DNA of 64,000 nucleotides. Source: Macrostomum lignano. Its lineage: Eukaryota. Location of the stretch: positions 310,001 to 374,000 of the forward strand of contig NIVC01000838.1 in NCBI GenBank assembly GCA_002269645.1, read 5' to 3'. The position numbers and the translations under genes are program-made. The notes under the pieces were generated by a model. That model was given only the letters and a program-made list of their open reading frames with translations, made no database searches and was not told the origin of the DNA. Shown piece after piece: positions 1 through 39,719 of this stretch (positions are counted from its first letter, which is position 1; every line of letters begins with the position of its first letter).

Positions 1-32
1 ATTAACCTGCAGTTAATTAACCTGCTTCGTCA

Positions 33-155
33 CACGTGCAGCTCCCGGTGTGCCAGCCAATCAGAGAGCTCGGCTTTCTACTGGCCTTTGGTTTGGCGCT
101 AGCAATGGAGGGCGAGAGGTGCGAACTCGAGAAAGAGGGAAGAAGATTATAAAAG
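33..155 (+). promoter_or_regulatory. Putative promoter of the 96-aa ORF: E-box CACGTG (33-38), CCAAT (57-61), TATAAAAG (148-155)
   Basis: Motifs seen upstream of ATG 237 and mirrored in the right arm. Function is inferred. The AG|GTAAA at 155/156 plus CGCAG| at 227 could alternatively define a 72-nt 5'UTR intron. Confidence 0.4.
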
Positions 156-236
156 GTAAACCCTGCTACCCGTTGATCTACTTGAGATTCGAAAGCCAAA
201 TAAGATAACTAATTAGTCATATCGCAGGTAATCAGC

Positions 237-527
237 ATGGCTTGCAGAAGAATCAGCTTTGATGGCTTCAGGCCCAGCAGCAGCGTGGCGGTGCTGCGGG
301 AGCGACTTCAGAGCTTAGCGTCGGGAACTTCAACGAGTGTTGTGATCGAACTTGGTGAGACTGAGGTGAGCTGCCATCTGCCAGAGTTCTACCATAGACA
401 ACCTCTGCAGCTCAAGAACATCGCGGCTCCTGCTCAGGATTCAACTGGCTGCGTGCTCAGGACCCACTACCCGCTGGCGAAGGAGAACCAGTCAGGTCTG
501 GCACTGGCTGACTCATCAAATCGATAG
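237..527 (+). CDS. 96-aa small protein, copy A; possible divergent ubiquitin-like fold
   Basis: ATG..TAG ORF identical in protein to copy B, with the 3 nucleotide differences all synonymous. Manual alignment to ubiquitin: [21 protein letters not shown] ~ [35 protein letters not shown] ~ NIQKESTLHLVLR. Confidence 0.6.
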   Translation: [96 protein letters not shown]

Positions 528-928
528 ATCATATGAGCCTCTGAACGTTTTGTATTTACGTTTTGTATTTGCATAGAAACTGTTTCGTATATCTTGTATA
601 CTGTGCATGCTTTGTGTTCCAGAGCTCATATTGGGCTGTGATAACTCTTGTGAATAGTTTCATGTACTTTCCATGCTGCATGTACTTTTATGCAAATATT
701 CTTTTAATCTCAAAGTGACAGCAATACAAATTTTATAAATATACTTGCAAAAATGATTTGTCATTTTTAACATAAATTCACATTGACTTAAAAATTTGTT
801 AAATTTTGCCGGCAGTGGTGGAGAAAGTCAGCAATTCGGAGCACAGTGCATTGTACTAAACGTATCAGAGAGAGCTGAATTATTTTATGTATTTGCGCAG
901 GTTCAGCTAACATACAAATTTTCCCTTG

Positions 929-1378
929 ACAGGGAGGCAGGGAGAGACAGGGAGAGACAGGGAGAGACAGGGGGAGATATATAGAGGCAGGGAGCGGAGA
1001 GAGGCAGATTCAAGCACTGAGGGAGAGGCAGATTCAAGCACTGAGGGAGAGGCAGATTCAAGCACTGAGGGAGAGGCAGATTCAAGCACTGAGGGAGGGG
1101 AGAGAGGCAGATTCAAGCACTGAGGGAGCGGAGAGAGGCAGATTCAAGCACTGAGGGAGCGGAGAGAAGCAGATTCTGGCACTGAGGGAGCGGAGAGAGG
1201 CAGATTCAAGCACTGAGGGAGCGGAGAGAGGCAGATTCAAGCACTGAGGGAGCGGAGAGAGGCAGATTCAAGCACTGAGGGAGCGGAGAGAGGCAGATTC
1301 AAGCACTGAGGGAGAGGCAGATTCAAGCACTGAGGGAGAGGCAGATTCAAGCACTGAGGGAGAGGCAGATTCAAGCAC
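929..1378 (+). repeat. Minisatellite: short AGGGAGAGAC run, then 24/31-bp unit GAGGCAGATTCAAGCACTGAGGGA(GCGGAGA)
   Basis: Direct tandem copies visible. Confidence 0.92.
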
Positions 1379-2029
1379 ACACAAGCCTATTCAATGCCAC
1401 GCATATTTGGATTGTCAAAAAAATGTCTTCGGCTTGCAAATTGTGAGTAGTTATTCTGTAAATTTTGAATTTATTGAATTATCATTAGTACAAAAATGCA
1501 CACGGACCTGCGTAGTGCTACTTAAAGTATGATGAAGTAGATATTTCCCAAACGCGGTTGCAGATAAAGTACAATTACTAAAGATCAAAGGCACAGAGAA
1601 TTTACATTCGTACTTAAAAACTAGAGCTTTGGACAGTAAGTAATTACAAATCTGAATATTTAAAATGAAATGCATAAAAGACATGAGTACGATCTCATTT
1701 ATATAAATTTAAAGTACAAAAGTTATTAATTTAAGTCATGTACTACTTGCACTAATAGTTAGTTAGATAAGCAGAGCTTGTCACTCAGTGCGGGCGTCAA
1801 CAATTTGTTAACTGAGGAATCTCAGCCAGCGCCTACTAACAAGTAGCGCATAAAGAATATGTAGCGAATCTCTTACAGTTTGTGTGGAAACTTTTGCACA
1901 GTGAAAATTAAATAAAAACGTTCAATGAGGAATTTCATAAGCCCTAAACTTTATAAAGACTAAACCTTATCCCTAAGTCTAGACTTCACTGAGCTCACAA
2001 ACCATTCAATTCAAAAACACTTCAATTCA

Positions 2030-3860
2030 CAAACTCTAAACTACTTAAACCATAAACTACACAAACCCTAAACTTCACAAAACATAAACTTCACAAACCA
2101 TAAATTTCACAAAACATAAACTTCACAAACCATAAACTTCACAAACCCTAAACTTCACAAACCCTAAAATACACAAACCCTAAACTTCACAAATGCTAAA
2201 CTACAGAAACCATAAACTTCACAAACCTCAAACTACACAAACCATAAACTTCACAACCATAAACTACACAAACCTTAAACTTCACAAACCCTAAACTACA
2301 CAAACCTTAAACTTTACAAACCTTAAACTTTACAAACCATAAACTTCACAAACCCTAAACTTCACAAACCCTAAACTTCACAACCATAAACTACACAAAC
2401 CCTAAACTACACAAACCCTAAACTTCACAAAACATAAACTTCACAAATCATAAACTTCACAAACCCTAAACTACACAAACCCTAAACTTCACAAACCCTA
2501 AACTACACAAACCCTAAACTTCACAAATGCTAAACTACAGAAACCATAAACTTCACAAATGCTAAACTGCAGAAACCATAAACTTCACAAACCTCAAACT
2601 ACACAAACCATAAACTTCACAACCATAAACTACACAAACCTTAAACTTCACACACCATAAACTTCACAAACCCTAAACTACACAAACCATAAACTTCACA
2701 AACCCTAAACTTCACAAACCATAAACTTCACAAACCATAAACTTCACAAACCATAAACTTCACAAACCATAAACTTCACAAACCCTAAACTTCACACACC
2801 ATAAACTTCACAAACCCTAAACTACACAAACCATAAACTTCACAAACCCTAAACTTCACAAACCATAAACTTCACAAACCATAAACTTCACAAACCATAA
2901 ACTTCACAAACCATAAACTTCACAAACCCTAAACTTCACAAACCATAAACTTCACAAACCATAAACTACACAAACCTCAAACTACACAAACCCTAAACTT
3001 CACAAATGCTAAACTACAGAAACCATAAACTTCACAAACCTCAAACTACACAAACCATAAACTTCACAACCATAAACTACACAAACCTTAAACTTCACAC
3101 ACCATAAACTTCACAAACCCTAAACTACACAAACCATAAACTTCACAAACCCTAAACTTCACAAACCATAAACTTCACAAACCATAAACTTCACAAACCA
3201 TAAACTTCACAAACCCTAAACTTCACACACCATAAACTTCACAAACCCTAAACTACACAAACCATAAACTTCACAAACCCTAAACTTCACAAACCATAAA
3301 CTTCACAAACCATAAACTTCACAAACCATAAACTTCACAAACCATAAACTTCACAAACCCTAAACTTCACAAACCATAAACTTCACAAACCATAAACTTC
3401 ACAAACCCTAAACTTCACACACCATAAACTTCACAAACCCTAAACTACACAAACCATAAACTTCACAAACCCTAAACTTCACAAACCATAAACTTCACAA
3501 ACCATAAACTTCACAAACCATAAACTTCACAAACCATAAACTTCACAAACCCTAAACTTCACAAACCATAAACTTCACAAACCATAAACTACACAAACCT
3601 CAAACTACACAAACCTTAAACTTCACAAACCATAAGCTTCACAAACCATAAGCTTCACAAACCATAAACTTCACAAACCCTAAACTTCACAAACCCTAAA
3701 CTTCACAAACCATAAACTTCACAAACCATAAACTACACAAACCTCAAACTACACAAACCTTAAACTTCACAAACCATAAGCTTCACAAACCATAAGCTTC
3801 ACAAACCATAAACTTCACAAACCCTAAACTTCACAAACCATAAGCTTCACGAACCCTAAA
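2030..3860 (+). repeat. 16-bp minisatellite AAACC(C/A)TAAACTTCAC, telomere-like (contains CCCTAAA)
   Basis: Long tandem array. The same family is on the opposite strand at 40138-41345. Confidence 0.96.
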
Positions 3861-3965
3861 ACATCAATCCAGTTTTGAGTTTGTTATACGATAATTAAGT
3901 TTACAATCCTGCCCAATAGCCAAATTTGAGCCTGACAATTATTAGAAGGCCGAAAGCTTCCAGAA

Positions 3966-4703
3966 TCACCGAACAGTCAGCGCCCTGTCCAAGAAGCTCT
4001 GCAGCCGGTCAAGCCGGGCGTCAATCTGCAGCACGTCTTCTTCAACGCCGCCCAGACCGGGCCCGCTGGACGCCGGCTGCAGCGGCTTCTTCGACTTCGC
4101 CTTCTTCGCTGACGAAGCCGCGGACCTTTGCGGTCGCCTTCTGTCGTCGTCGGCGCTTGTCGGCCGCCGCTGCCGGCGCTCCGTCACGTAGGCTGTCGGA
4201 TCGAAGCGCGGAGTGCAGCGCCGCGGAGTCGACACTCGCGAGGCGACAGGGGACGCGTTTGCGGAGACAGCCGCCGGACCGTGCACCCGAGCCCGCTTGT
4301 GCAGCGCCAGCTCCCGCAGCACCTGACTCAGCCGGAGCTGCAGCATCCGCTCCATGGCTCGGAGCTCGCGCGCCTCCGACTGCAGCTTCTTCATCGCCGA
4401 CGAGGACGCGTTGCCGACGGCTCCGCGTGGCGAGGCCGACGCGGTCACGGAGCTTTGCAGCTCGGCTTCCAGGCCGCGGGCCGCCTCCCGCATCGCCGCA
4501 ACCTCGAGGCGCAGCTGCGCCGCCGAACTGGCAGCTGGGCGCAGTTGGGCGTTCTCGCGACGCAGCCTGGCGTTCTCCTGCTCCAGCTGGCGGGCCGCCT
4601 GCCGCAGCCCTGCGGCATCCAGCATCCGATCTTCATCGTCAGCGTCGGTCTCGGTCCGGGCGCTGTCGGAGCGCTGGCGATTCAGCGGCAGGCGACATTC
4701 GAT
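3966..4703 (-). CDS. CCDC61: CCDC61/VFL3-like centrosomal coiled-coil protein, exon 2 (last)
   Basis: Acceptor TTTGATCAG|ATC, phase 0. Encodes IECRLPL, a coiled coil, ELALHKR, RFDPTAYV and IDARLDRLQSFL, matching recalled CCDC61 motifs IHYPLPL, ELALYKR, RFDPTAFV and IDARLKALQEYM. Confidence 0.88.
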   Translation of the reverse strand: MECRLPLNRQRSDSARTETDADDEDRMLDAAGLRQAARQLEQENARLRRENAQLRPAASSAAQLRLEVAAMREAARGLEAELQSSVTASASPRGAVGNASSSAMKKLQSEARELRAMERMLQLRLSQVLRELALHKRARVHGPAAVSANASPVASRVSTPRRCTPRFDPTAYVTERRQRRPTSADDDRRRPQRSAASSAKKAKSKKPLQPASSGPGLGGVEEDVLQIDARLDRLQSFLDRALTVR

Positions 4704-4805
4704 CTGATCAAAGATTGGAGTTGCTCGTACAACTTAGCTCATGTATTTTGGCACAATAGATACTACTTATATCAGTAGCTAAAGTTTCAAGGGGGCTTTT
4801 GGCAC

Positions 4806-6619
4806 TATAACAGTTTTTATTCCTGCTATCTTCTGCTCACAAGTCAGAAAGAATTTCTAACACACTGGCCTCTGAGGGCCCTGTTATGAGTGTGAGGCTC
4901 ACATCTCCGAATCTCTCTCTGTGCCGCAAATTATTCAAGACAGTGTATTTTATAGTCAAGCAAGCAAACTGGTTTAGTTGACAAAATGAAGAGCAATGCA
5001 TAGTTTGAGCGGGGCAGGGTTATCGCTCGAGCATTTTTCTCTGTCCCGTTGTTAGGCAACCATATCACCCCCCCCAAGCATTGCTGCGAGTCTACTGTGT
5101 CACGCGTTCGCAGGCTGCTGGCTTGGCCTTCGAACCTCAGCTTTGTTATCTGCCCTTTAGTGTAGAGCTGGTCTGGCTGGATAGAACCGGTTGAGACGAG
5201 AGGAGGCCGTTGTTTTTTCGCTTCGATGTAAGCACAATTCCAGTGCTTACATATCTTCCCCTTTTTGGAGACTGACACTCGTGTCAGTCTGACACGAAAG
5301 TGTTGCTTCTCGATGTGACTTCGTCCTTGTAATAAGCAGTTTCATACTTGAATTCGTCACTAGTTGTTCTGGCTGAGCTAGTTAGTCGGCTGATTGGTTG
5401 TGCGTCGTAGTTGAGTCGGTTTGGGCGGGGTGCGTTTGTCAGAAGTTACAAACCAGCAAGTCCCTTATGTTTGCAGTACAGTTTGAGTTTGTGTTTTTCA
5501 TGGGGCTCTTTTACCCCGAAGTAGTCGTCAGTAGTTACTCAATTTTGAATTCGCGGATATCTTGATATACTGTTGCTGCAGAACTCCATCAGGCTTGCCT
5601 GGTTGCACGTCCAGTGTCGCAATCTGGCAGTGTTACTAATTGAGTTTAAATTCTCACTTGTTCAATTGATCCGTTTTGTACGCCAAGTCGTAGGCCAAAA
5701 ATTCGAAGAAATGACTGCCAAATGTTTTATTCGATCCAAAGTTGTGCCTTGACCGACTTAAGCACTACATGCATAGAAGATAAATAGGTTTTGTACCGAT
5801 ATCTCTTGGATTGCCATTTAACGCATCGAGTAGAGCGGCGGCTGCACATTTGTAACGGCTTGGTGCGTCACAGTTGCGTCTTAATGTCGTCAAGCATACC
5901 ACGTCGATAATTGTCTCTTGGCTCTCTGGAGAATCTCGGTTAATTGAGGACGAATTAGTTATGTTGGGCCTCCGATTTCCGATGATGTTGAAACACGTTG
6001 CAACTTGCTCTTCTTGCTTGCTTGATGAGATGAATCGTTGACTTTACACTGACCTTGATCGAGCACGTTCTTTCTGACCTGTGGCAGGATGATGTTGTCT
6101 AGCGATGGAGAAGGCTTGTTGCACTCACCCCAGTCAAGTTGGCGGAACTGGGTGACTCACTCTCAGGGAACCAGATATAACAGTTTTTTCCTGTTATCTT
6201 CTGCTCACAAGTCAGAAAGAATTTCTAACACACTGGCCTCTGAGGGCCCTGTTATGAGTGTGAGGCTCACATCTCCGAATCTCTCTCTGTGCCGCAAATT
6301 ATTCAAGACAGTGTATTTTATAGTCAAGCAAGCAAACTGGTTTAGTTGACAAAATGAAGAGCAATGCATAGTTTGAGCGGGGCAGGGTTATCGCTCGAGC
6401 ATTTTTCTCTGTCCCGTTGTTAGGCAACCATATCACCCCCCCCAAGCATTGCTGCGAGTCTACTGTGTCACGCGTTCGCAGGCTGCTGGCTTGGCCTTCG
6501 AACCTCAGCTTTGTTATCTGCCCTTTAGTGTAGAGCTGGTCTGGCTGGATAGAACCGGTTGAGACGAGAGGAGGCCGTTGTTTTTTCGCTTCGATGTAAG
6601 CACAATTCCAGTGCTTACA
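4806..6619 (-). mobile_element. Non-autonomous LTR retroelement (TRIM/LARD-like), 1814 bp, in the CCDC61 intron
   Basis: LTRs 6176-6619 (5') and 4806-5251 (3'), identical except near one end; TSD GGCAC (4801-4805, 6620-6624); PBS TGGTTCCCTGA (6173-6163); PPT AAAAAGGGGAAGA before the 3' LTR; no long internal ORF. Confidence 0.93.
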
Positions 6620-7012
6620 GGCACCGCCGCAAATTATGGCGATAGTCCACACGCGAAGCCAGAAAAGAGACAAGCAGTCATGGACCACTCAAAAATGGTG
6701 CAATTATTTAAGAGGCCGATTTCCTGGAAAAAATACGAGCTACACTGCAGAAAAAAGGAGAAATCAGTTTTTCATCACATGCCCCAGATCAAATGCGATA
6801 ATTGATTTGTGATAGGAAAATCCACATACTAAATCTTTTTCTAAGCTCCACAGTGCATTTTTCCAGGAAATTGGCCTCCAAAAATTGCACGATCTTTGAG
6901 TTTTACGTGCTGTTATACTACAGTGGTACTTGGGCCAATCATTGTACACGAGCCCCAAATTTGCACAGAAGCAAACCCTGGGACTACCGAATTCTACTGA
7001 AGATCTTCATAC

Positions 7013-7357
7013 CTGTTCGAAGCGAGTTCTATAGGTGAGCACCAGGTGCTGCAGATCAGGGTGCTCTATAGTCGGCTTGTCTAGATGAAGCCGCAGGTCG
7101 CTGGATGGCCGGTTTCGCTCAGCGATGGCGGCTTTGAGCATCTGCAGGAATGCGCTGTAGGGCCGGCCTGGAAGCAGCTTGGCAACTAAATCCGAGCTGT
7201 AGTGCCCAGTCCAGGACTCACCTGTCTTTGGCCAGACAAGACTGAGATCAATGCTATCTGACTGGCTGGAATCAACTGTGGCCATGGCCATTTGGCCATT
7301 CAAGCAGATGGGAACTGTCTGCAGTGAATGCTGCGGCACCTGATGCTGCTGCTGCAT
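7013..7357 (-). CDS. CCDC61: CCDC61/VFL3-like, exon 1 (N-terminal head domain)
   Basis: ATG 7357. DLSLVWPKTGESWTGHY..AFLQMLKAAI..HLVLTYRTRFEQ resembles ELEVEDRMTADQWRGEF..IFCHMLESAL..YLILIYSVEFDR. Donor CAG|GTATGA, phase 0. Spliced CDS is 1083 nt (360 aa). Confidence 0.85.
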
Positions 7358-7852
7358 CCTACTGGCAGATGCCTTGGAGCGCCTTGGAGTTGGCTGCGAA
7401 TTTAAGTTGACAGCAAGGCAATAGTTTGTAAACTATGAGCCTACAATTAAAAGCCAGGTAGGTGTAAGTTCAATAAGGTAAATGTGAAAACCAAAAATAT
7501 ATTTCGTTAAACCAAAGTTATAATAGGAGCAAAAGATTTATATAATGCCAATGAAATTTGTTTAGCTTAAAATAATATGAAAAGCAAGGAGCAATAATAA
7601 AGAAATTCAAGATTAAATAAATTTATATTGAATTTTAAAAAAGGTAGACCTAAACCTTTACTTATAAATAGCAGACATTGATATGAATAATAATTAGAAA
7701 ACAGTGGATTCCATCTAAATATACCATGGTTTTATATTTACTGAAGAACTATAATAGCCACTCCAATCAAATCGAAAGTACTATATTTAGAAGTTCTTCT
7801 ATCCATATGAAGGGTGTTAATGGAGCAAGAGAACTGTTCACATAGCCTGTGC

Positions 7853-8048
7853 CAGGGGCATAGCCAGGAATTTCCTATGGGGGGGGGATACACCAAGGTG
7901 AATTTTCTATGGGGGGGGATACACCAAGGTAGAAGTGCTATGACAGAGTCACATGGTAGCATGAATAGCAACAAAGGGCAACAAAAAAGTTTTGGTCAGG
8001 CTCTTTGGGGGGATACACCCCCCCCCTATCCCCCTCCCTACACCCCTA
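7853..8048. mobile_element. Degenerate hAT-type MITE (~196 bp)
   Basis: Imperfect TIR CAGGGGCATAG / CTACACCCCTA; flanking 8-mers GCCTGTGC / GCCTGTGG (7/8 match); internal G-run duplication. Confidence 0.6.
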
Positions 8049-9478
8049 GCCTGTGGTAGTCTAGAAAACTAAGTTTACAATAAATAAGTAGAGAAATGAC
8101 AGCTGTGCCACGACACATGATGTATATTCAAGCTCATCGTTTTCGTTAATATTTTTCATTCAGAAAATCAGAGTCAGAAGTACGAAAATTTGATAGTTAG
8201 GTCTACAATTCTTACTGCTATGGAATTAGAAAAACAAAACAAATTGTATAAATAATAAAATTACAAAACTATTTTGTTCAACCCAAAATTTGAGTCTATT
8301 AAGTATACAAGTGAAATTTTTATACTACCATAAAATGCTTGAAGTTGAAGTACAAAGCAAACCATGCTGGAGTGGTTACTTGTTGCCAGTCCAGTTGTAG
8401 TTAGGCCTACTAAATAATCACAAGGTAGTGAAGGGAGGCAGAAAGCTTTCACTTTTTTTACAGATCAACAAATCGATCACTAAGTACAAATTTTTAAATA
8501 CTTTTCGAGCTGTCGGTTCGTGACTTGTAAGGGTTATGTGGTTATATTTTTATAATGTTGTTTGGCTGACCATGGTGAAGTAAAATTGAAAAACATTTTG
8601 TGTCAAATTGGTTCGAAAAAAAAGCTTCCTTAATTATCGTAGCATAACGAGGTAATCTGAACTGTCAAACAATTTATGTATATCATTAATTTTGAATTCG
8701 TAACTTTTAAAATGTTTCTGATCAAGTAAATTTCGAAATTGAAAACTTTTTTACATGGAAAAAAATTCTAAATACGAATTTCAATTCAGGGTCCATCCAG
8801 ATCCACAGAAGAACTACTTTTGTTGTTTAGCAGAGCTAGAGCAGCTAGCTAGGCGGCCTAGGCCTAAGGGCTTATCGAACCGAGGTAGGTGATTAACTGA
8901 CTGACTGCCCGGTTGGGTCAGATTACATTAAATGCAGTCCTAAACAGTGTAATAAGCAATGCTTTTTTATCTGTCATCTACACCATAACGGCATAACCTT
9001 GTCTTCTGTCTCTGACCATACCACAGTCCACGATACCAAAAACGGGCGTAGCCAAGGGGGTCATCATGGGGGTCATGACCCCCCCCAGCCGGCTGATCCA
9101 GGCCAAATTTTCAACACCCCCTCCCCCGTTGCCCTGCCCCGGCCCCGCCCTATCAGTGACTGACTATAGTGTCATTAGCATTAGCCCTTTTGAGTCTGAC
9201 CCTCCTCTTTCCTCTGTTGACAAGTTCAGGTCTATCTATACTAGGCCTAATTGTTGCATTACTGAATTATTATTACTATTACTGCCAGAGCCAGTCTGCC
9301 ATCTCTATAGGCCCTAGCCCTAGTCTATAACATAGTGTACACTGACACTGTCTATATCTCTGATTAGTGATTGGTACTAGCCATTATATGAATTTATTAT
9401 GGATATGATTATGTATGATTAATTGTATTTATATTAAATTATAACATATATATTTCTTGACTTTACCTATGGCTCTAT

Positions 9479-9678
9479 CAGGGGTAGTGGAGCCTAATAT
9501 TTTAGGGTAGGGGGCACTGGGCATAGGGCAAGAAGGGCATAGTTACCTTTATGGCTTTATAAGCTATTAATTAGGGCCTAAAATCAGAAAAAAGCACTAA
9601 AAATTACCACATAGACTCATTTTCTTAGGGGGGGGGGCATGTGTCCCCAGTGCCGCAAGCAAGCTCCCACCACCCATG
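9479..9678. mobile_element. Degenerate MITE (~200 bp)
   Basis: TIR CAGGGGTAGTGGAGC / GCTCCCACCACCCATG; flanks GGCTCTAT / GGCTAATA match only partly. Confidence 0.45.
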
Positions 9679-10189
9679 GGCTAATATTAATATCACAAGT
9701 AGCCCTCCCTTTATTAATATTTATGTGAGTTCTAGCTAGAAATATAAAATAATTTTATTTTACTTTCTATATAGCTTAACTTAGCCATTCTACAATCTAC
9801 TTATTTTTTGTATTTTGTAGATTTTGACAATAGGCCTATAAAAATAAAACTCAAGCTAATAATAAGGCCAAAGCCAAGGAATAAAGAATGTTTAAGTAGA
9901 AGGATAGAAAACTATATGTCATAGGGGTATTCCCGTACGGTACAAAATCCTACCGCTGTAACCAAAGTTGTGACAGGGCTGATTCCTCTGTCTAGAAATC
10001 TCAGCCACTGATACCAAAGTTGTTGCAGGGCTTACTTTTGTCCCTACAAATTATCCCTCTATTGCCACCAAGTTGTAACAGGGGTTATTTCTGTTTGCCA
10101 ACTATAGTTATCCTGATTATACTTGTTTTTACTCCCTAACTATTTCTTAGAATTTCATTTAAATATTTCTGGGTAGCATTCTTAGTAGC

Positions 10190-10290
10190 GTTTCTGGTAG
10201 CGTTCTGGTAGCTTATGGCCTGCTTTCTGGTAGCGTTCTGGTAGCTTATGGCCTGCTTTCTGGTAGTGTTCTGGTAGTTTATGGCCTGAG
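10190..10290 (+). repeat. ~38-bp unit, about 3 copies (TTCTGGTAGCGTTCTGGTAGCTTATGGCCTG)
   Basis: Direct copies visible. Confidence 0.8.
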
Positions 10291-11737
10291 CGGTCTAGTA
10301 CTGGTATATGTATTGGTGAATAGTCCTAATCGGGCGTTACTGAGACTAGAGGGTCACGGCCCCTCTCTTAGTATATCTCCAAGAATTAGTCCCAATTCCC
10401 TTCTCTTAGCAAATTTCTTAGAATCGTTTCATAGGTTTTGCAAATGAATAAGTCGCTATTTAGCTCAAAGACTTTGAAATGATTTAGATTGAACTGCTTA
10501 TTCTGTTCGCAATTATTTGCTCACGGGTAAAAGACAGTTAGAGTATATTTGTCGCAAAACCGCTCCTATATATAGTGATTTCCCCCCCCCATACGATTAA
10601 AACAAAAAAATAATTCTCCAATTTATTTCGCGCATTAAAACAAACTATTATTTGGCGTTCGCGTAGATTCAGTTTCCAAGAAAGATTCGAATATACAGTT
10701 ATTACATTGAAAGAACATTCGAGTATACTATTATAAAGGCATAGCACTAGTACATATATTTCTTAGAGTTTCTTAGAAAAATGTTTTAAAATAAACATTT
10801 TTGAAATAAAAAATGAAGTTAAGCCTAATGTTTTTTTAATTTAAAATAGAAAAAATATGAGATTATTAGATATTGAACATTTTTATATAATAGTACTATA
10901 AAAAAATAGCAGTAGGCAAAAAATGGTTAAGTAGAATTTGAGCTATAAGGCAAGTATAGCTATGTATCCTTTATTGCAAAGATCCTTTGAATTTTAATTT
11001 CATGCAATAACTAGATTTCTTTAAGAATACTTTGTAGTTCCATTATTATGGCTCTTCTAATGGCTTTTACATTAAGAACATGAGTTCTTTTGAGTATCTC
11101 TGAGTTTAAAGAATAAAAAATATAGAACTAGGTTAGGCAAATTTAAAGGCTATTTTAAGTATAACAATATTATTGTTTGCAAGATACTACTTAAAATTTC
11201 TATATTGTATAGTAGCATGTTGATAGAACTATAAGTGTATCTTTTAAAAAATCTTATTTAGAAAGAAACAGTAAATGCAAGATCTTTTTGTTTATATGCT
11301 AATTGATAGTCTATCTTTGAACTAAAAACTTTATATGTATAATATCCCTTATATCAAATAAAACAATGAGCATTAAGCTTCACTTATGACTTCTATTGCC
11401 ATGTCTTTATTGGTCTTTGTAATCCTGGTTGCATCTATTCAAGGCTTTAGGGAATAGTAAATTAGTAATATTACTATTTTAAAGTAGCCTTTATATTTGC
11501 CTAACCAAACCTATCTCTATGTATTTTTTTAAGCTTAAGTCAAGGTGCTTGAAGCAACTAATTTTCTTGATATAGAAGCCATCAAGAAAGCCACAATAAT
11601 GGAGCCCTAGAATATTTCTGAAGAAGCCTAGTACCATTTGGAGGCATTGTGCAAAAAGATAGCTAAGTGTATTCAACTCATGGGAGAGTATTTTAATAGG
11701 GCAGCTCAGATTCTACTCAGATTTTCAATTCAAGTTG

Positions 11738-12537
11738 AACAAAGTTTTAAGTCAAAGTGGATTTATGTTAAAAATGACAAATCATTTTTTCAAGTATATT
11801 TATAAAATTTGTATTACTGTCACTTTGAGATTAAAAGAATATTTGCATAAAAGTACATGCAGCATGGAAAGTACAGGAAACTATTCACAAGAGTTATCAC
11901 AGCCCAATATGAGCTCTGGAACACAAAGCATGCACAGTATACAAGATATATGAAACAGTTTCTATGCAAATACAAAACGTAAATACAAAACGTTCAGAGG
12001 CTCATATGATCTATCGATTTGATGAGTCAGCTAGTGCCAGACCTGACTGGTTCTCCTTCGCCAGCGGGTAGTGGGTCCTGAGCACGCAGCCAGTTGAATC
12101 CTGAGCAGGAGCCGCGATGTTCTTGAGCTGCAGAGGCTGCCTATGGTAGAACTCTGGCAGATGGCAGCTCACCTCAGTCTCACCAAGTTCGATCACAACA
12201 CTCGTTGAAGTTCCCGACGCTAAGCTCTGAAGTCGCTCCCGCAGCACCGCCACGCTGCTGCTGGGCCTGAAGCCATCAAAGCTGATTCTTCTGCAAGCCA
12301 TGCTGATTACCTGCGATATGACTAATTAGTTATCTTATTTGGCTTTCGAATCTCAAGTAGATCAACGGGTAGCAGGGTTTACCTTTTATAATCTTCTTCC
12401 CTCTTTCTCGAGTTCGCACCTCTCGCCCTCCATTGCTAGCGCCAAACCAAAGGCCAGTAGAAAGCCGAGCTCTCTGATTGGCTGGCACACCGGGAGCTGC
12501 ACGTGTGACGAAGCAGGTTAATTAACTGCAGGTTAAT
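11738..12537. repeat. Right arm of the ~800 bp inverted duplication (partner 1-~800)
   Basis: Reverse complement of 1-800; ORF-track pairs 17..199/12339..12521 and 237..527/12011..12301 mirror exactly. Confidence 0.97.
12011..12301 (-). CDS. 96-aa small protein, copy B; possible divergent ubiquitin-like fold
   Basis: Same protein as 237..527. Synonymous changes AGA>AGG, CAA>CAG and CTG>CTA. Confidence 0.6.
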   Translation of the reverse strand: [96 protein letters not shown]

Positions 12538-12924
12538 TGAGACCACTTCACGGTGTGGGGGACTGGCGGGCAGTGAATAAAAAACTGACTCTAAAGAGAG
12601 ACAGGCAGGTGAGCTAATTAATTAGCTATATCAGGAGGTGCGATAGCGGCCGGATTTTCTTATCTGTCTGTCGGCGACTGCCAGAGCGCAATGGCAGCCT
12701 CCTTTGAAGTTTTGCCGACTATAGGCTGCGCGTCTGTTGGTATCAGGCGTGGCAGATTGTTAGCACTTCGGTGTCTGGGTTAAACTGGGTTGCACGATAT
12801 TAATTTGTTTTGTTTGTTCTTCTGCTTGTATACTCTGTTTTATTTGTTTGTAAAGTGAGTTTGTAACTTTGTTTGTTGACTTTGAGGATTAGTTTCAAGT
12901 CTTGGCAACTTAACACCAGATGAT

Positions 12925-13437
12925 AAATCAAACAAGTGGCCCCATTAAAGTTCAGGGGTGGGGTAGCGGCCCCATTAAAGTTCAGGGGTGGGGTAGCGGC
13001 CCCATTAGAGTACAGGGATGGGGTAGCGGCCCCATTAAAGTTCATGGGATGGGGTAGCGGCCTCATTAAAGTTCATGGGATGGGGTAGCGGACTTATTAA
13101 AGTTCAGGGGATGGGGTAGCGGACTTATTAAAGTTCAGGGGATGGGGTAGCGGCCTCATTAAAGTTCAGGGAATGGGGTAGCGGCCTCATTAAAGTTCAG
13201 GGGATGGGGTAGCGGCCTCATTAAAGTTCAGGGGATGGTGTAGCGGCCTTATTTAAGTTCAGGGGATGGGGTAGCGGCCTCATTAAAGTTCAGGGGATGG
13301 GGTAGCGGCCTTATTAAAGTTCAGGGGATGGGGTAGCGGCTTTATTAAAGTTCAGGGAATCAGAGATGGGGTAGCGGCTTTATTAAAGTTCAGGGATGGG
13401 GTAGCGGCATCATTAAAAGACAGGGGATGGGGTAGCA
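12925..13437 (+). repeat. 30-31-bp G-rich minisatellite GGCC(C/T)CATTAAAGTTCAGGGGATGGGGTAGC
   Basis: Tandem copies; lies in the inferred 5'UTR intron of the qvr-like gene. Confidence 0.94.
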
Positions 13438-13606
13438 GACCAATAACTAAGTAGACATCTTTTGCCTTTTATTAACCTAGTTATGTTTGGAAATGTGCAA
13501 TTTATTCAAATATTCCAATCATTTACGTATGTCCATGCTCGGCAAGCAATATTAAGTTTAATTATTGGAATGAAAATTAATTCAATTCCAGCTCTTATCC
13601 CAGCCA

Positions 13607-13706
13607 ATGCACTGGCTTGTAGTCTTTGTGATAGTATCTTTGTTTGCTCTGCTGATTGGCCCGTCAACATCGTCATTTTCTGCTGACCAAGATCACTATT
13701 GTCGGG
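13607..13706 (+). CDS. qvr: Quiver/sleepless-like Ly6/uPAR protein, exon 1 (signal peptide)
   Basis: MHWLVVFVIVSLFALLIGPSTSSFSADQDHYCR; hydrophobic leader; donor CGG G|GTAA, phase 1. Confidence 0.82.
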
Positions 13707-13778
13707 GTAATAATTAGTATATTGTGATTAAATTTCTGACGCGCTTGGTGATTAAATATGTATTTTACCTAACTGTAG

Positions 13779-13922
13779 ACCAGGTGACCGACTGTGTTGA
13801 ATGCGACACGCAGCAGGACAGCCGCTGTGCTGATCCATTCGATACAGACTTATTGACCAGCGGCGCCTTGCAGTCTGTACGCTGCAATGGCGTCTGTTCG
13901 AAATTGGTGCAACGAAGTCCAG
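13779..13922 (+). CDS. qvr: Quiver/sleepless-like Ly6 protein, exon 2
   Basis: CVECDTQQDSRCADPF..CNGVCSKLVQRSP vs recalled Drosophila Qvr CYECDSWTDARCKDPF..CNGCCVKMVRHQRSP; phase 1-1. Confidence 0.9.
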
Positions 13923-13963
13923 GTGTGCCTTATTAATATATTTGCCTGCATTATCTGAGAACC

Positions 13964-14257
13964 CGAGAATCTGACCCACCTAAGAATCTGACCCGCTTGA
14001 GAATCTGACCCACCTGAGAATCTGACCCACCTGAGAATCTGACCCACCTGAGAATCTGACCCACTTGAGAATCTGACCCACCTGAGAATCTGACGCACCT
14101 GAGAATCTGACCCACCTAAGAATCTGACCCACCTGAGAATCTGACCCACCTGAGAATCTGACCCACCTGAGAATCTGACCCACCTGAGAATCTGACCCAC
14201 TTGAGAATCTGACCCACCTGAGAATCTGACCCACCTGAGAATCTGACCCACCTGAGA
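13964..14257 (+). repeat. 17-bp minisatellite GAGAATCTGACCCACCT
   Basis: Fills most of qvr intron 2. Confidence 0.95.
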
Positions 14258-14296
14258 AAATGACAACAGACAGGTGAGCTGTCCCCCCCCCCGCAG

Positions 14297-14514
14297 ACTC
14301 AACTAGAGTTCGGCGGACCTGCTCTCAGAATCTCCGGCTGCAGAAATTGTCCCCCTATTTGGTCTGCATCGACGAATCGCGCGGCAATGGTCAACTCTGC
14401 TTTTGCGAAGAGAAAAACTGCAATTTTGCGCCGCCTGCTACTGGCGAAGCGGCTGGTCGTTTAGTGCTGCTGATGATTGCAGTCGGCAGAGCGACTGCCA
14501 TGCTGTGTTGCTGA
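14297..14514 (+). CDS. qvr: Quiver/sleepless-like Ly6 protein, exon 3 (CFCEEKNCN plus hydrophobic, GPI-type tail)
   Basis: VRRTC..VCIDESRGNGQLCFCEEKNCN vs VRRMC..[21 protein letters not shown]; TGA at 14512-14514; total 153 aa. Confidence 0.9.
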
Positions 14515-15575
14515 CTAAATTTACCTGCTATTTTTTGCAAAGTTCGTTTTTTTCAGCAACAGTTTTGGCTGTGAAGTTTGTTCTTTTTTGCTGCTTCAAG
14601 GACAGTTAGGGTTAGGTAGTTTGCAGGAGGGCAGTTGCCGTCAGCGCTGGTTATCTGGGACGATGTTGTTGATCCCTGAAGATGCACATGGATGCGTACG
14701 CAGGCACACGCTCACTGAGGGTGTACAGCAGCCCTGACTTTCTTCTCATCGTCACACGTGTACACTCTGTGCCTTTGGAGGTGGGATGGATAAGTAAAAA
14801 GTAATTTCAAAATGCGAGTAATACGCTGCTGCATAAATCATATCGTTATCAATTATGCTTAGTTTTTTATACATTGCTGAGCACCCTTATGCTGCTTTAC
14901 ACAAAATATGAATCATTTTTTGTATCGCGCACCTGCTATTTGAATTATTAATTTTGCTGAGTTCAGTATTTAATAATTTTTCTATACGCGCACACTTGCA
15001 ATTCCAGAGTTATATTTTAATGCCAGTTGTCGAAGACTTTAATTGTTGGAATTACAATCTATTTGTAGAACAGATATTTATTAGCATATTTTCCCATGTA
15101 TTATTAATGATTAACCTTGTACATAATTTTTTGCTTTTAAACAGTAGAATTTTCTTTTTTTCTAACTTTGTAGTTTATTTGGCGGCATTTTTCCTATTCG
15201 CCTGTTTAAAAGTGTTCTTACAGTTGCTGACTTATCAAGCTGAATGCTTTTTTATTCTGATTAAAAATTCCTGTATGCTTTTATTGGTTTCAACCTTCAT
15301 TGATCGTAACTGTTGTAATAGATTATTTATCAGTTTGCCTTGATTAATAATCATAATGCTAAATACTTGAACACACCAGTTTATGTGCAATCCAGTCGGC
15401 TGTTCTATGCCATTTTTGTTTTAATCTAGTCTATAATTCACCCGTGTCGAGTTTTCAACTCGGGTCGCGGAATTTTTCATTATTTAAGTATCAATTTTTG
15501 ATAAAAGTTTACATGATACTTCCTTTAAAGTTAAAGGAAGCTCTAATAAACCAGAAACTTAGCTCTAACGTTTAT

Positions 15576-19698: not shown

Positions 19699-19719
19699 GT
19701 GAGTTCGACGTTGGGGAGA

Positions 19720-20082
<363 letters not shown>

Positions 20083-20111
20083 ACTCAAGCAGCCCCTCCC
20101 CCGCCGCGCAG

Positions 20112-20277
20112 AGTGGAGTTTGACGCCTACCGCGCCGATTTGGAGGCGGCCAACGCAGGCGGCGGCGGCAGCGCTAAACTGGACGAATTGCGCTCAAAAT
20201 TCGAAGCCCAACGAACCAAATACGAGCGACTGCGCCAGGACGTGCTGGTTAAGATCAAGCTGCTGGACGAGAACCGG
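20112..20277 (+). CDS. ARFIP: Arfaptin, exon 4
   Basis: [31 protein letters not shown] vs [31 protein letters not shown]; phase 2-0. Confidence 0.95.
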
Positions 20278-20494
20278 GTGAGTGTGCAGGTGCTGCTCAC
20301 AGGCTGCTCCCTCGTCCTCACGCGCCAACCACTGTGTAGCAGGGTGTGTGCATGTCTGACGATTCGAAAGTCAGGGCTTTCAGAAATCAGAATTAGGCCT
20401 CCAAAGTACACTGCTTCTTGATTAGAAAAATATGGGGACAATTTTATATTTTTATTCCCTTAGCGCATTGCAAATCCCAAACTCACCTACTCAG

Positions 20495-33248: not shown

Positions 33249-33439
33249 GGGCAGTAAACACTTAGGCCCAGCACAGGGTATCTCTCTCACTAGATCAGGT
33301 GGACTGAGCTACTGTGCAGCGGATCACAGCACTCATAGGGAAAGCTAGTGAATGCTGCTGAATAACCAGTTAGCAGCCAGTCACAACAGTAGCTTAAATT
33401 TTGTAGGCATCCCTAGTGAAAATTATCTCCTCTACCCTC

Positions 33440-34775
33440 TCCTCTCCTCTCCCGTTTCTGGTGCATATCCCCTCTCTCCTCTCCAGTCTCTCCTCTCCAG
33501 TCTCTCCTCTCCAGTCTCTCCTCTCCAGTCTCTCTCCAGTCTCTCCTCTCCAGTCTCTCCTCTCCAGTCTCTCCTCTCCAGTCTCTCTCCAGTCTCTCCT
33601 CTCCAGTCTCTCCTCTCCAGTCTCTCCTCTCCAGTCTCTCCTCTCCAGTCTCTCTCCAGTCTCTCCTCTCCAGTCTCTCCTCTCCAGTCTCTCCTCTCCA
33701 GTCTCTCCTCTCCAGTCTCTCCTCTCCAGTCTCTCCTCTCCAGTCTCTCCTCTCCAGTCTCTCCTCTCCAGTCTCTCCTCTCCAGTCTCTCCTCTCCAGT
33801 CTCTCCTCTCCAGTCTCTCCTCTCCAGTCTCTCCTCTCCAGTCTCTCCTCTCCAGTCTCTCCTCTCCAGTCTCTCCTCTCCAGTCTCTCCTCTCCAGTCT
33901 CATCTCTCCAGTCTCATCTCTACAGTCTCACCTCTACAGTCTCATCTCTACAGTCTCACCTCTTCCTTCTCTCCTTTTCTATCTCACCCCTACCCTCTCT
34001 TCTCTCCAGTCTCATCTCTCCAGTCTTTCCTCTCCAGTCTCTCCTTTCCAGTCTCTCCTCTCCAGTCTCTCCTCTCCAGTCTCTCCTCTCCAGTCTCTCC
34101 TCTCCAGTCTCTCCTCTCCAGTCTCTCTCCAGTCTCTCCTCTCCAGTCTCTCCTTTCCAGTCTCTCCTCTCCAGTCTCTCCTCTCCAGTCTCTCCTCTCC
34201 AGTCTCTCCTCTCCAGTCTCTCCTCTCCAGTCTCTCCTCTCCAGTCTCTCCTCTCCAGTCTCTCCTCTCCAGTCTCTCCTCTCCAGTCTCTCCTCTCCAG
34301 TCTCTCCTCTCCAGTCTCTCCTCTCCAGTCTCTCCTCTCCAGTCTCTCCTCTCCAGTCTCTCCTCTTCCTTCTCTCCTTTTCTATCTCACCTCTAGCCTC
34401 TCTTTTCGCCTGTCTCACCCCTACCCTCTCTCCTCTCCAGTTTCACCTCTCCAGTCTCTCCTCTCCAGTCTCTCCTCTCCAGTCTCTCCTCTCCAGTCTC
34501 TCCTCTCCAGTCTCTCCTCTCCAGTCTCTCCTCTCCAGTCTCTCCTCTCCAGTCTCTCCTCTCCAGTCTCTCCTCTCCAGTCTCTCCTCTCCAGTCTCTC
34601 CTCTCCAGTCTCTCCTCTCCAGTCTCACCTCTCCAATCTGACCTCTCCAGTCTCACCTTTTCCGTCTCTCCTCTCCTGTCTCACTTCTTCCCTCTCTTCT
34701 CTCCTGTGTCACTTCTTCCATCTCTTCTCTCCTCTCCTGTCTCACTTCTTCCATCTCTTCTCTCCTCTCCTGTCT
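33440..34775 (+). repeat. 14-bp minisatellite TCTCCTCTCCAGTC
   Basis: Long tandem array with a repeated internal variant block. Confidence 0.96.
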
Positions 34776-35397
34776 CACCAGGCCGTCAAAGTCTCCAGAC
34801 ATAGCCTAATCGAGCATGTCTGAGCCTGTCCAGAATTGTTGTTGATCAGGATGCCACGGAGAATCGATGGCTCAATTAATTGCAGTGTGAACGAGCCTTA
34901 GAGACCAAAAAGCAACAGGTGAAATTTATTTCAATTTCTATGCATCATATATTTATGAATATGCATGTATATTAATAAATAAATATATATATATAATATT
35001 GAGGGCATTCATTTAGTGCAGAAGCAGAAGTCACACAGAGGCGAACAGTGTGTGTTTGTATTGCTTTTGCGCGACTAACTGTTCTGATAGCTTGTTCTCG
35101 CTAGTGCGAATTCAATTGAGAAAAAACGCACACCGCATTGGAGCAAGTGCACCAAAGATGCGGTAAGTCGGTAAGTAAGGGGCTTCTTCGAGGGTGGCGG
35201 GGCATGCAGGCTGTAAAAAGCAGAAGAACAATTCTCTAAAGTTCTGTTCCAGTTTGTTTGCCTGTCTGCCGGTTGCTGCTCGGGTAAGGGGCAGAGAAAA
35301 ATAATAAGCATAGCGAAAGTGAACTCCAGCTGAAGGGGCCGGCAGGGAGGCAGGCAGGGAGGGAATGCCACGAGATGACGAATCAGACAGAACGTGC

Positions 35398-36921: not shown

Positions 36922-36949
36922 CTGTCGAATGCGGTGGAGGAAGCGATGT

Positions 36950-37820: not shown

Positions 37821-37858
37821 TTCAAAGAACCATATGAATCCATCGCGGCACTGGTTAC

Positions 37859-38154: not shown

Positions 38155-39719
<1,565 letters not shown>

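What the first reader, a model, noticed from the sequence alone, without database searches (positions are those of the whole stretch)
237..527. Duplicated 96-aa microgene with only synonymous differences and a cryptic ubiquitin-like signature
Seen: two inverted copies (237-527 +, 12011-12301 -) differ at only 3 positions (398, 401, 506), all third-codon synonymous, while the 3' flank differs at about 7 sites. Since roughly a quarter of random substitutions are silent, 3 of 3 suggests selection on the protein, though the sample is small. Inference: the peptide aligns by eye with ubiquitin ([12 protein letters not shown] ~ [24 protein letters not shown] ~ [22 protein letters not shown] ~ [20 protein letters not shown] ~ NIQKESTLHLVLR). 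It lacks the C-terminal Gly-Gly, so it would be a non-conjugatable, lineage-specific UBL that I cannot assign to a named family.
Basis: partly seen in the sequence, partly recalled or inferred. Interest (0 to 1): 0.75.

Follow-up and report, generated by a model that had tools for sequence, protein, structure and literature searches.

The report
Unannotated duplicated flatworm microgene, not ubiquitin-like
Two mirror-image copies of a small, promoter-equipped 96-codon reading frame really exist in this flatworm (Macrostomum lignano) DNA and look like an unannotated species-restricted gene, but nothing supports the claimed resemblance to ubiquitin.

Summary
ORFs 237-527(+) and 12011-12301(-) encode the same 96-aa protein and differ only at 398, 401 and 506, all silent. 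They lie in an inverted duplication. It spans 806 nt in the window, and about 1.2 kb of unique sequence plus a 31-nt minisatellite in the source scaffold.

The window is Macrostomum lignano, NIVC01000838.1, position 310000+p. The arms flank a CCDC61-like gene. A second scaffold, NIVC01000913.1, has the same layout. One of its copies carries a non-synonymous change, G30E, so the tally is 3 silent to 1 replacement (p about 0.05-0.13).

Each arm looks like a compact Pol II gene:
- CCAAT and TATA boxes, then the first AUG in a good Kozak context.
- GC falls from 56% to 29% at the stop codon.
- Codon usage is exon-like in one frame only.
- There are no indels in any copy of the ORF.
- Promoter plus CDS diverge about 3-fold less than the neighbouring DNA.

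The product has no homologue in 1.84 billion representative proteins.

The ubiquitin reading fails every test: Pfam, PDB, BLASTP, shuffle test, AlphaFold and Foldseek.

Best reading, about 50%: an unannotated orphan small gene in an inverted segmental duplication. A spurious ORF homogenised by gene conversion remains a serious rival. Transcription could not be tested.

The parts
1..806 (+). Arm A of the inverted duplication. Only part is visible: the window edge cuts it, and in the scaffold it continues about 420 nt further left and then into a 31-nt minisatellite.
   Evidence: 806 nt, 98.5% identical to 11732-12537 in reverse complement; the extension is seen in L002 (NIVC01000838.1).
11732..12937 (-). 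Arm B of the inverted duplication. It holds about 1.2 kb of unique sequence; 11732-12537 pairs with window 1-806.
   Evidence: L002 arms 1950-2942/13868-14860 and 1716-1949/14860-15093.
12938..13436 (.). 31-nt minisatellite bounding arm B on its outer side. An inverted array of the same unit bounds arm A just left of the window.
   Evidence: period 31, 16 copies; inverted matches between L002 1314-1689 and 15587-16900.
237..527 (+). Copy A of the 96-codon ORF, stop codon included.
   Evidence: It starts at the first ATG downstream of the TATA box, with A at -3 and G at +4. Codon-usage log-odds are 0.225 in this frame and at most -0.01 in the other five. GC1/2/3 = 0.57/0.50/0.62.
12011..12301 (-). 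Copy B of the 96-codon ORF. The protein is identical; the DNA has three silent differences.
57..61 (+). CCAAT box within GCCAATCAG, an NF-Y-type consensus. The arm B equivalent is at 12477-12481 (-).
   Evidence: Read from the sequence. Identical in both arms. The functional assignment is inferred.
148..155 (+). TATA box TATAAAAG, 82-89 nt upstream of the ATG. The arm B equivalent is at 12383-12390 (-).
   Evidence: Read from the sequence. Identical in both arms. The functional assignment is inferred.
1..38 (+). Cluster of candidate transcription-factor sites: two tandem (T)TAATTAACCTGC homeodomain-type motifs (1-10, 13-25) and an E-box CACGTG (33-38). A 16-nt palindrome AGCTAATTAATTAGCT lies about 90 nt further upstream, seen in arm B at 12610-12625.
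   Evidence: Read from the sequence. A lead only, not tested.
723..776 (+). One-mismatch variants of the poly(A) signal: AATACA 723, TATAAA 734, AATATA 738, CATAAA 771. There is no canonical AATAAA or ATTAAA. Arm homology ends 30-80 nt downstream.
   Evidence: homology end.
3966..7357 (-). Context: the CCDC61-like gene between the arms, with exons 7357-7010 and 4712-3966. It corresponds to PAA74921.1 / A0A1I8I8M8 of Macrostomum lignano.

Best explanation
The feature is a real inverted segmental duplication in the genome of the free-living flatworm Macrostomum lignano (Mlig_3_7 scaffold NIVC01000838.1). Its arms flank a CCDC61-like gene.

Each arm carries one complete compact Pol II-type unit. 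From the outside in: a 31-nt minisatellite, about 640 nt of upstream sequence with homeodomain-type sites, an E-box, a CCAAT box and a TATA box, a leader of about 55 nt, the first AUG in good context, an intronless 96-codon ORF, and an AT-rich trailer of about 280 nt with weak poly(A)-signal variants.

I think this is most likely an unannotated, taxonomically restricted ('orphan') small protein gene present as two inverted paralogues. The predicted product is a soluble 10.5-kDa protein with no signal peptide or membrane segment. It has a basophilic-kinase consensus, RRIS-F, at residues 4-8. At low confidence, the N-terminal half is predicted as beta-alpha-beta-beta and the C-terminal half as disordered.

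The near-identity of the copies comes from a fairly recent duplication. On top of that there is either gene conversion between the arms, or purifying selection on the proximal promoter and coding sequence, or both.

Shown: the duplication, its architecture in two scaffolds, the intact ORF in all four copies, coding-like composition and codon usage, and the absence of homologues. Inferred: transcription, translation, promoter function and any biochemical role. It is not a ubiquitin-like protein by any test available here.
For: Identity of the locus: window 1-14000 is 100% identical to NIVC01000838.1 (L002), and NIVC01000913.1 (L001) has the same two-copy inverted layout.

All four copies have intact 96-codon ORFs. 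Variable CDS sites are three silent (162, 165, 270 from the ATG) and one replacement (89, G30E in B2). The CDS has no indels. In the B versus B2 comparison, the 5' and 3' flanks within the arm carry 5 indels.

Gene-like anatomy: CCAAT at 57-61, TATAAAAG at 148-155, no ATG between the TATA box and 237, A at -3 and G at +4.

Composition: GC is 47% in the 5' flank, 56% in the CDS and 29% in the 3' flank, stepping down at the stop codon. GC3 > GC1 > GC2, as in confirmed exons of the window.

Codon usage: the log-odds score trained on the window's confirmed exons is 0.225 in frame, against at most -0.01 in the other five frames. That equals the weaker real exons and ranks about 3rd of 38 against control ORFs.

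B versus B2 divergence: proximal promoter 0.33%, CDS 1.03%, in-arm 3' flank 2.87%, pooled non-genic background 2.2%. Four substitutions were seen in promoter plus CDS where about 13 are expected (Poisson p about 0.003, my arithmetic). One replacement was seen at about 218 non-synonymous sites where about 4.9 are expected (p about 0.045).

No structured-RNA signal: no Rfam hit, and the fold z-score is 0.18.

Non-annotation has a plausible explanation. The Mlig_3_7 annotation used TransDecoder (PMC5730564), whose default minimum ORF is 100 aa (my own knowledge).
Against: No evidence of transcription or translation could be obtained with these tools.

The ORF is not a called gene in the GenBank annotation of either scaffold, and it is not on record as a protein.

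There is no homologue anywhere. The only hit among 1.84 billion representatives is a tandem-repeat ORF whose single unit scores 10.6 bits, E = 5e4.

The silent-to-replacement ratio is not significant on its own, at p = 0.05-0.13.

The 460-nt run of perfect A-B identity (-299 to +161) includes non-coding promoter. It is what a gene-conversion tract would also produce, so low divergence need not mean constraint.

Copies A and A2 are identical by very recent descent, so only three copies are independent.

A 96-codon open frame at 56% GC has about a 2% chance per ATG (my arithmetic), which is not rare on a genome scale.

There is no canonical poly(A) signal. The structure model is of low confidence, pLDDT 44.
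Confidence: 0.5

Rival explanations
1. The ORF is a chance open frame, or part of a non-coding transcript, inside a recent inverted segmental duplication. On this reading the silent-only differences are luck. The block of identity over promoter and 5' CDS is a gene-conversion tract, not a sign of selection.
For: Differences between the arms are strongly non-uniform: none from -299 to +161, and 18 in the remaining 746 nt or so (p about 0.003 for such a run, my arithmetic). They grow denser toward the inner edge of homology, as expected where conversion decays at repeat ends. The silent-to-replacement test gives only p = 0.05-0.13. There are no homologues, no annotation and no confident fold.
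Against: The in-frame codon usage and GC3 > GC1 > GC2 pattern are specific to one of six frames. GC drops from 56% to 29% exactly at the stop codon. The ORF starts at the first AUG after a CCAAT/TATA pair, in good context. The in-arm 3' flank of B and B2 diverges at the background rate (2.87%) while promoter plus CDS do not. Conversion alone would not be expected to spare the 3' flank in both scaffolds.
Confidence: 0.3
2. The arms are two copies of a dispersed repeat, for example a solo LTR or another transposon fragment. Its promoter-like and poly(A)-like signals would belong to the element, and the ORF would be incidental.
For: LTRs carry TATA and CCAAT boxes, weak poly(A) signals and often internal minisatellites. 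LTR elements make up 21% of this genome (PMC5730564). A separate small LTR-type insertion lies 4 kb away.
Against: No further copy or fragment is found in the 64-kb window or in the roughly 28 kb of extra scaffold sequence fetched. There is no match to any transposon protein or Pfam family. The inner ends lack the TG..CA termini of LTRs. Both arms share the same outer minisatellite, as a single duplication event would give. No target-site duplication was identified, but the outer boundary lies inside the arrays, so this could not be tested properly.
Confidence: 0.1
3. The ORF encodes a divergent, non-conjugatable ubiquitin-like (beta-grasp) protein.
For: Only the by-eye alignment. The low-confidence AlphaFold model contains a helix packed against strands in residues 3-48.
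Against: No Pfam hit at E<=10 and no PDB sequence match at E<=10. BLASTP against ubiquitin gives no alignment at E<=100. The predicted order is beta-alpha-beta-beta, without the N-terminal hairpin or the C-terminal strand of a beta-grasp fold, and residues 53-96 are disordered. Foldseek finds nothing below E = 0.49 and no ubiquitin-like protein in the 50 matches listed. The protein ends in ...SSNR, with no Gly-Gly.
Confidence: 0.02
4. The inverted duplication is an assembly artefact.
For: Mlig_3_7 is a redundant PacBio assembly of a hidden polyploid (PMC5730564; PMC10468722).
Against: The arms differ at 12 of 806 positions and are separated by 10.9 kb of unique, gene-bearing sequence. A second, 3-5% divergent scaffold was assembled independently with the same architecture.
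Confidence: 0.02

Closest known systems
Taxonomically restricted ('orphan', possibly de novo) small protein genes missed by annotation length cut-offs
   Same: A short intronless ORF below 100 codons with no detectable homologue. It has its own promoter-like signals and coding-like composition, is predicted to be largely disordered, and is absent from the annotation.
   Different: Expression and translation are unproven here. The age and mode of origin (de novo or diverged beyond recognition) cannot be judged without sister-species sequence.
Inverted gene pairs in palindromic segmental duplications homogenised by gene conversion (for example Drosophila Hsp70 at 87A, or primate sex-chromosome palindromes)
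   Same: Two complete promoter-plus-gene units lie head-away in inverted orientation and are nearly identical. Identity is highest in a central tract and decays toward the repeat edge. The arrangement could also allow inversion of the spacer.
   Different: The arms are short, about 1.2 kb plus a minisatellite, and the spacer is a 10.9-kb unique segment holding an unrelated gene. Conversion is inferred from the pattern only. Both scaffolds show the same spacer orientation.
Ubiquitin-like (beta-grasp) proteins
   Same: Similar length, and a predicted helix next to beta-strands in the N-terminal half.
   Different: There is no sequence, profile or structural match. The secondary-structure order is wrong, the C-terminal half is disordered, and there is no Gly-Gly.

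Membership tests
Ubiquitin-like (beta-grasp) superfamily | Significant sequence or profile similarity to ubiquitin or ubiquitin-like families | tested here: not met
   Pfam gives no family at E<=10. PDB chains give none at E<=10. BLASTP against ubiquitin gives none at E<=100. In the shuffle test z = 1.6, and 8% of shuffles score as well.
Ubiquitin-like (beta-grasp) superfamily | Beta-grasp fold: a beta-hairpin, a helix, then further strands forming a mixed sheet | tested here: inconclusive
   The single-sequence AlphaFold2 model has pLDDT 44. It predicts E3-8, H16-27, E33-39 and E42-48, with the rest disordered. Foldseek against the PDB has a best E of 0.49 and no ubiquitin-like protein in the 50 matches listed. 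There is no support, but the model is too poor to exclude a fold.
Ubiquitin-like (beta-grasp) superfamily | C-terminal Gly-Gly, for conjugatable members | tested here: not met
   The protein ends ...LADSSNR.
Functional protein-coding gene (orphan small gene) | Intact reading frame in every copy | tested here: met
   Four copies on two scaffolds all have 96 codons, with no indel or stop.
Functional protein-coding gene (orphan small gene) | Purifying selection on the protein (dN/dS well below 1) | tested here: inconclusive
   Three silent changes to one replacement, with S = 70 and N = 218 sites, giving dN/dS of about 0.1 but p = 0.05-0.13. B versus B2 shows 1 replacement where about 4.9 are expected, p about 0.045. 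The result is confounded by possible gene conversion.
Functional protein-coding gene (orphan small gene) | Coding-type composition and codon usage in the proposed frame | tested here: met
   Only frame 1 of six scores positive, at 0.225, within the range of confirmed exons. GC3 > GC1 > GC2, and there is a GC step at the stop codon. The training set was small, about 3.4 kb.
Functional protein-coding gene (orphan small gene) | Transcribed and translated | not testable with these tools
   No M. lignano RNA-seq, Ribo-seq or proteome data are reachable. The protein collections hold only annotated M. lignano proteins.
Functional protein-coding gene (orphan small gene) | No homologue outside the lineage | tested here: met
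   There are 0 hits at E<=10 among 5.8 billion clusters. Among 1.84 billion representatives there is one spurious repeat-inflated hit.
Inverted segmental duplication with gene conversion | Two inverted arms of high identity, reproduced in an independent assembly | tested here: met
Inverted segmental duplication with gene conversion | Conversion tracts: runs of identity longer than a uniform spread of differences allows | tested here: inconclusive
   There is a 460-nt identical run among 18 differences in about 1206 nt (p about 0.003, my arithmetic). The run covers the promoter and 5' CDS, so selection explains it equally well.
Transposable element (LTR or TIR element) | Transposon protein domains, terminal motifs, target-site duplications, many dispersed copies | tested here: inconclusive
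   No transposon domains and no extra copies in about 92 kb examined. The genome-wide copy number and the outer termini, which lie inside the minisatellites, could not be examined.

The most novel reading that the evidence does not exclude
The ORF is a young gene, de novo-born or diverged beyond recognition, that is specific to Macrostomum lignano or its closest relatives. It would already be under purifying selection and doubled by an inverted duplication whose arms exchange sequence by gene conversion. If so, it is a tractable case of new-gene fixation in a transgenic, RNAi-amenable flatworm, missed by annotation only because it falls four codons short of a 100-aa cut-off.
Probability: 0.3. 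Interest if true: 0.4.

Novelty: new member of a known kind. Interest (0 to 1): 0.25.

Why it matters
If it is expressed, this would be one more lineage-restricted small gene that a 100-aa annotation threshold hides in a regeneration model organism. It comes with a compact, well-delimited promoter of about 640 nt that could serve as a reporter driver. The inverted pair, together with a second divergent scaffold, offers a small natural test of gene conversion against selection. It has no bearing on ubiquitin biology. As it stands it is an ordinary candidate gene, not a discovery.

Tried and rejected
1. The ubiquitin-like reading was rejected.

2. The single HMMER hit, P0002 (E = 6.9e-5), was rejected. 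It is a 590-aa translated tandem repeat matched six times. One unit alone scores 10.6 bits, E = 5e4.

3. A structured non-coding RNA was rejected. There is no Rfam family or tRNA in the window. The putative transcript folds no better than shuffles, z = 0.18.

4. An exact look-up of the ORF product on public contigs found nothing on record. This negative is uninformative. For this species the collection held only annotated or UniRef proteins: the CCDC61-like cluster has no Logan or other read-assembly members.

5. I tried to find orthologous loci in other species through the neighbouring CCDC61-like gene, using the C-terminal exon and then the full protein. Both searches returned only the M. 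lignano cluster, so no cross-species test was possible.

6. An internal intron in the ORF (GTGAG donors at 356 and 366, CAG at 383-385) was considered. It would be about 20-30 nt, too short to be credible, and it is not needed.

7. Trans-splicing at CGCAG|GTAATCAGCATG was considered. The M. lignano spliced leader ends in AUG (PMC8629364) and would be in frame. However, the acceptor matches the YTNCAG motif imperfectly (TCGCAG). I kept this as an untested idea only.

8. An assembly artefact was rejected because two divergent scaffolds share the architecture.

Full report
**Observation**

Window 237-527 (+) and 12011-12301 (-) translate to the same 96-aa protein. Aligned, the two copies differ inside the ORF only at 398, 401 and 506. 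All three are A/G transitions at third codon positions.

The ORFs are embedded in an 806-nt inverted repeat (1-806 and 11732-12537) that is 98.5% identical, with 10,925 nt between the arms. Nothing else in the window resembles it at the DNA or protein level.

Three details were missed or are slightly off:
- The 236 nt upstream of the ATG are identical between the arms.
- The 3' flank holds 9 differences, not about 7, and they crowd toward the inner end of homology.
- Arm A begins at window base 1, so the window truncates the repeat.

**Where the window comes from**

A coiled-coil exon between the arms (3966-4625, minus strand) matched one protein cluster at 100% identity. Its members are from Macrostomum lignano: UniRef A0A1I8I8M8, GenBank PAA74921.1 and one unnamed NCBI protein. 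Both NCBI members could be traced to scaffolds of assembly GCA_002269645.1.

Locus L002 (NIVC01000838.1) is the window itself. Window 1-14000 equals L002 14673-674 at 100% identity, so window position p is scaffold position 310000+p.

Locus L001 (NIVC01000913.1) is a second version of the same region and has the same architecture. It is 95-96.5% identical to L002 in the interior and on the copy-B side. On the copy-A side it is almost identical, with 20 mismatches in 6.4 kb.

M. lignano is a hidden polyploid, and its assembly contains many blocks that are at least 95% identical (PMC5730564; PMC10468722). L001 and L002 are therefore homeologues or haplotypes.

The dense minisatellites, PDZ exons and an arfaptin-like exon fit an animal genome.

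**Anatomy of the repeat**

L002 shows the 6 kb that the window lacks. With that sequence the arms extend to about 1.2 kb of unique sequence (L002 1716-2942 against 13868-15093). Each arm is bounded on the outside by an inverted array of the same 31-nt minisatellite.

The spacer carries the two-exon CCDC61-like gene on the minus strand, exons 7357-7010 and 4712-3966. Copy A is therefore convergent with that gene's 3' end. Copy B lies 4.4 kb upstream of its start, on the same strand.

Reading each arm from the outside in:
- The 31-nt minisatellite.
- About 640 nt of upstream sequence. It holds a 16-nt palindrome AGCTAATTAATTAGCT, two tandem TTAATTAACCTGC motifs, an E-box CACGTG (33-38), GCCAATCAG (CCAAT at 57-61) and TATAAAAG (148-155).
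- A leader of about 55 nt without any ATG.
- The ORF's ATG at 237, with A at -3 and G at +4, then 96 codons.
- An AT-rich trailer with only one-mismatch poly(A)-signal variants (723-776).
- The end of arm homology, about 280 nt past the stop codon.

So the duplicated module is one whole promoter-to-3'-end unit.

**Is it a gene?**

Points in favour:

1. The ORF starts at the first AUG after a canonical CCAAT/TATA pair.

2. GC content is 47% upstream, 56% in the ORF and 29% straight after the stop codon. GC3 > GC1 > GC2, as in the confirmed exons of the window.

3. I trained a codon log-odds score on about 3.4 kb of confirmed or probable exons from the window. It gives 0.225 in the ORF's frame and at most -0.01 in the other five frames. 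That is the same kind of frame margin as real exons scored leave-one-out. The ORF would rank about 3rd among 38 when compared with control ORFs, and the top controls adjoin a known exon and may themselves be coding.

4. All four copies (A, B, A2, B2) keep the frame open and carry no indel. In the B versus B2 comparison the flanks within the arm carry five indels.

5. Between the B copies of the two scaffolds, substitutions run at these rates:

| Region | Divergence |
|---|---|
| Proximal 300 nt of promoter and leader | 0.33% |
| CDS | 1.03% |
| In-arm 3' flank | 2.87% |
| Pooled non-genic sequence | 2.2% |

Four substitutions in promoter plus CDS, against about 13 expected, gives a Poisson p of about 0.003 by my arithmetic.

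Points against:

1. No expression data could be reached.

2. Neither scaffold's GenBank annotation calls a gene here. The annotation pipeline used TransDecoder. By my own knowledge its default minimum is 100 aa, so a 96-aa ORF would be dropped even if it were transcribed.

3. There is no homologue anywhere.

4. The substitution evidence is thin, as set out next.

**The silent-substitution argument, re-done**

In this ORF, 24% of random substitutions are silent, or 35% if only transitions are counted. Three of three silent therefore has p = 0.015-0.044. Sites 398 and 401 are 3 nt apart and may not be independent events.

The second scaffold adds a replacement, G30E in copy B2. It also shows that A and A2 are identical over at least 1.39 kb, so they count as one copy. 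On the three-copy tree there are three silent changes and one replacement. That gives dN/dS of about 0.1 with S = 70 and N = 218, and p = 0.05-0.13.

The differences between A and B are far from evenly spread. There are none from -299 to +161 relative to the ATG, and 18 in the rest of the roughly 1.2 kb. By my arithmetic, the chance of such a run is about 0.003.

That identical tract covers the proximal promoter, the leader and codons 1-53. Selection would produce this pattern, but so would a gene-conversion tract between inverted arms. The two cannot be separated with three sequences.

One observation leans toward constraint. The in-arm 3' flank diverges at the background rate in the B versus B2 comparison, while promoter plus CDS do not. 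This is not proof.

**The ubiquitin idea**

Every available test is negative:
- Pfam gives no family at E<=10, which includes the ubiquitin families.
- No PDB chain matches at E<=10.
- BLASTP against ubiquitin finds no alignment at E<=100.
- The best Smith-Waterman score against ubiquitin is 29.
- The first block of the by-eye alignment borrows 'VIS' from the 5' leader, behind an in-frame stop at 210-212.
- The AlphaFold2 model was built without an alignment, because none exists. It is poor, with mean pLDDT 44. It predicts strand 3-8, helix 16-27, strands 33-39 and 42-48, and disorder from residue 53 onward. That is not the beta-grasp order.
- Foldseek against the PDB returns nothing better than E = 0.49, and no ubiquitin-like protein appears in the 50 matches listed.

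**No homologues**

The word-indexed search of 5.8 billion clusters found nothing at E<=10.

The exhaustive HMMER search of 1.84 billion representatives found a single protein at E = 6.9e-5. That protein is a translated tandem repeat matched six times. One unit scores only 10.6 bits, E = 5e4, so it is a chance match multiplied by repetition.

**What the protein would be**

The product would be 10.5 kDa, pI 7.8, rich in Ser, Leu, Ala and Arg, and without a signal peptide or hydrophobic segment.

The only recognisable motif is RRIS-F at residues 4-8. By my own knowledge this is the classical R-R-x-S-hydrophobic consensus of basophilic kinases such as PKA. A small, partly disordered, phospho-regulated cytosolic or nuclear protein is my best guess, with low confidence.

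The homeodomain-type sites and the E-box upstream suggest cell-type-restricted expression. This too is untested.

**Rivals**

- A spurious ORF in a converted duplication remains serious, at about 0.3.
- A dispersed repeat such as a solo LTR is possible but lacks positive evidence, at about 0.1. There are no transposon domains, no extra copies in about 92 kb, and both arms share the same outer minisatellite.
- An assembly artefact is very unlikely, because two divergent scaffolds agree.
- A structured RNA has no support.

**Verdict**

The gene-like reading is reasonable but unproven, at about 0.5. The ubiquitin-like reading is not supported.

This is a candidate unannotated orphan microgene in an inverted segmental duplication of a highly duplicated flatworm genome. 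Both the gene type and the duplication type are known kinds, and its interest is modest until expression is shown.

Noticed in passing
window 4806-6619: A 1.8-kb element with 446-nt terminal direct repeats (4806-5251 and 6176-6619, 99.3% identical) lies inside the intron of the CCDC61-like gene. It is absent from the paralogous scaffold L001, which shows the empty site at about L001 11092-11096. It is flanked by a 5-bp target-site duplication, GGCAC (4801-4805 and 6620-6624). It looks like a small non-autonomous LTR-type insertion that is polymorphic between the two scaffolds.
   Followed up: partly
window 11131-11506: A 376-nt unit bounded by 28-nt terminal inverted repeats (93% complementary) lies in the AT-rich region upstream of the CCDC61-like gene. 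It is MITE-like.
   Followed up: no
L002 12447-18859 vs L001 12027-18445; L002 1243-3919 vs L001 1911-4583: The two scaffolds differ at only 20 mismatches and 8 gaps in 6.4 kb on the copy-A side. On the copy-B side and in the interior they are 3.5-5% divergent. This mosaic pattern suggests recent recombination or conversion between homeologues or haplotypes, or partial assembly redundancy.
   Followed up: partly
window 222-239: The sequence TCGCAG|GTAATCAGCATG lies just 5' of the start codon. If the AG were used as a spliced-leader acceptor, the M. lignano SL, which ends in AUG, would be in frame with the ORF and add MVIS. The reported acceptor motif is YTNCAG (PMC8629364), and this site mismatches it at one position. 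Untested.
   Followed up: partly
window 1-38 and 12610-12625: Homeodomain-type motifs cluster upstream of the CCAAT box: TTAATTAACCTGC twice in tandem, and a 16-nt perfect palindrome AGCTAATTAATTAGCT. An E-box CACGTG is also present. All are identical in both arms where both are visible.
   Followed up: no
window 13592-14514 (L002 160-1082): An annotated 158-aa Ly6/QVR-family gene (Pfam PF17064) lies just outside arm B. A 17-nt minisatellite (13961-14258) lies within its span.
   Followed up: no
whole window: Minisatellite load is extreme: 47 TRF rows at score 200 or above, with several arrays of 1-2 kb and periods of 4-40 nt. Many of them create long spurious ORFs, for example 33352-34641, 57754-59286 and 62455-63807.
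   Followed up: no
window 35075-40133 (-) and 19699-20421 (+): Exons of a PDZ-domain gene lie on the minus strand (36187-36921; 39729-40133 looks like a second PDZ exon by eye, but Pfam found no family there). An arfaptin-like domain exon lies on the plus strand.
   Followed up: no
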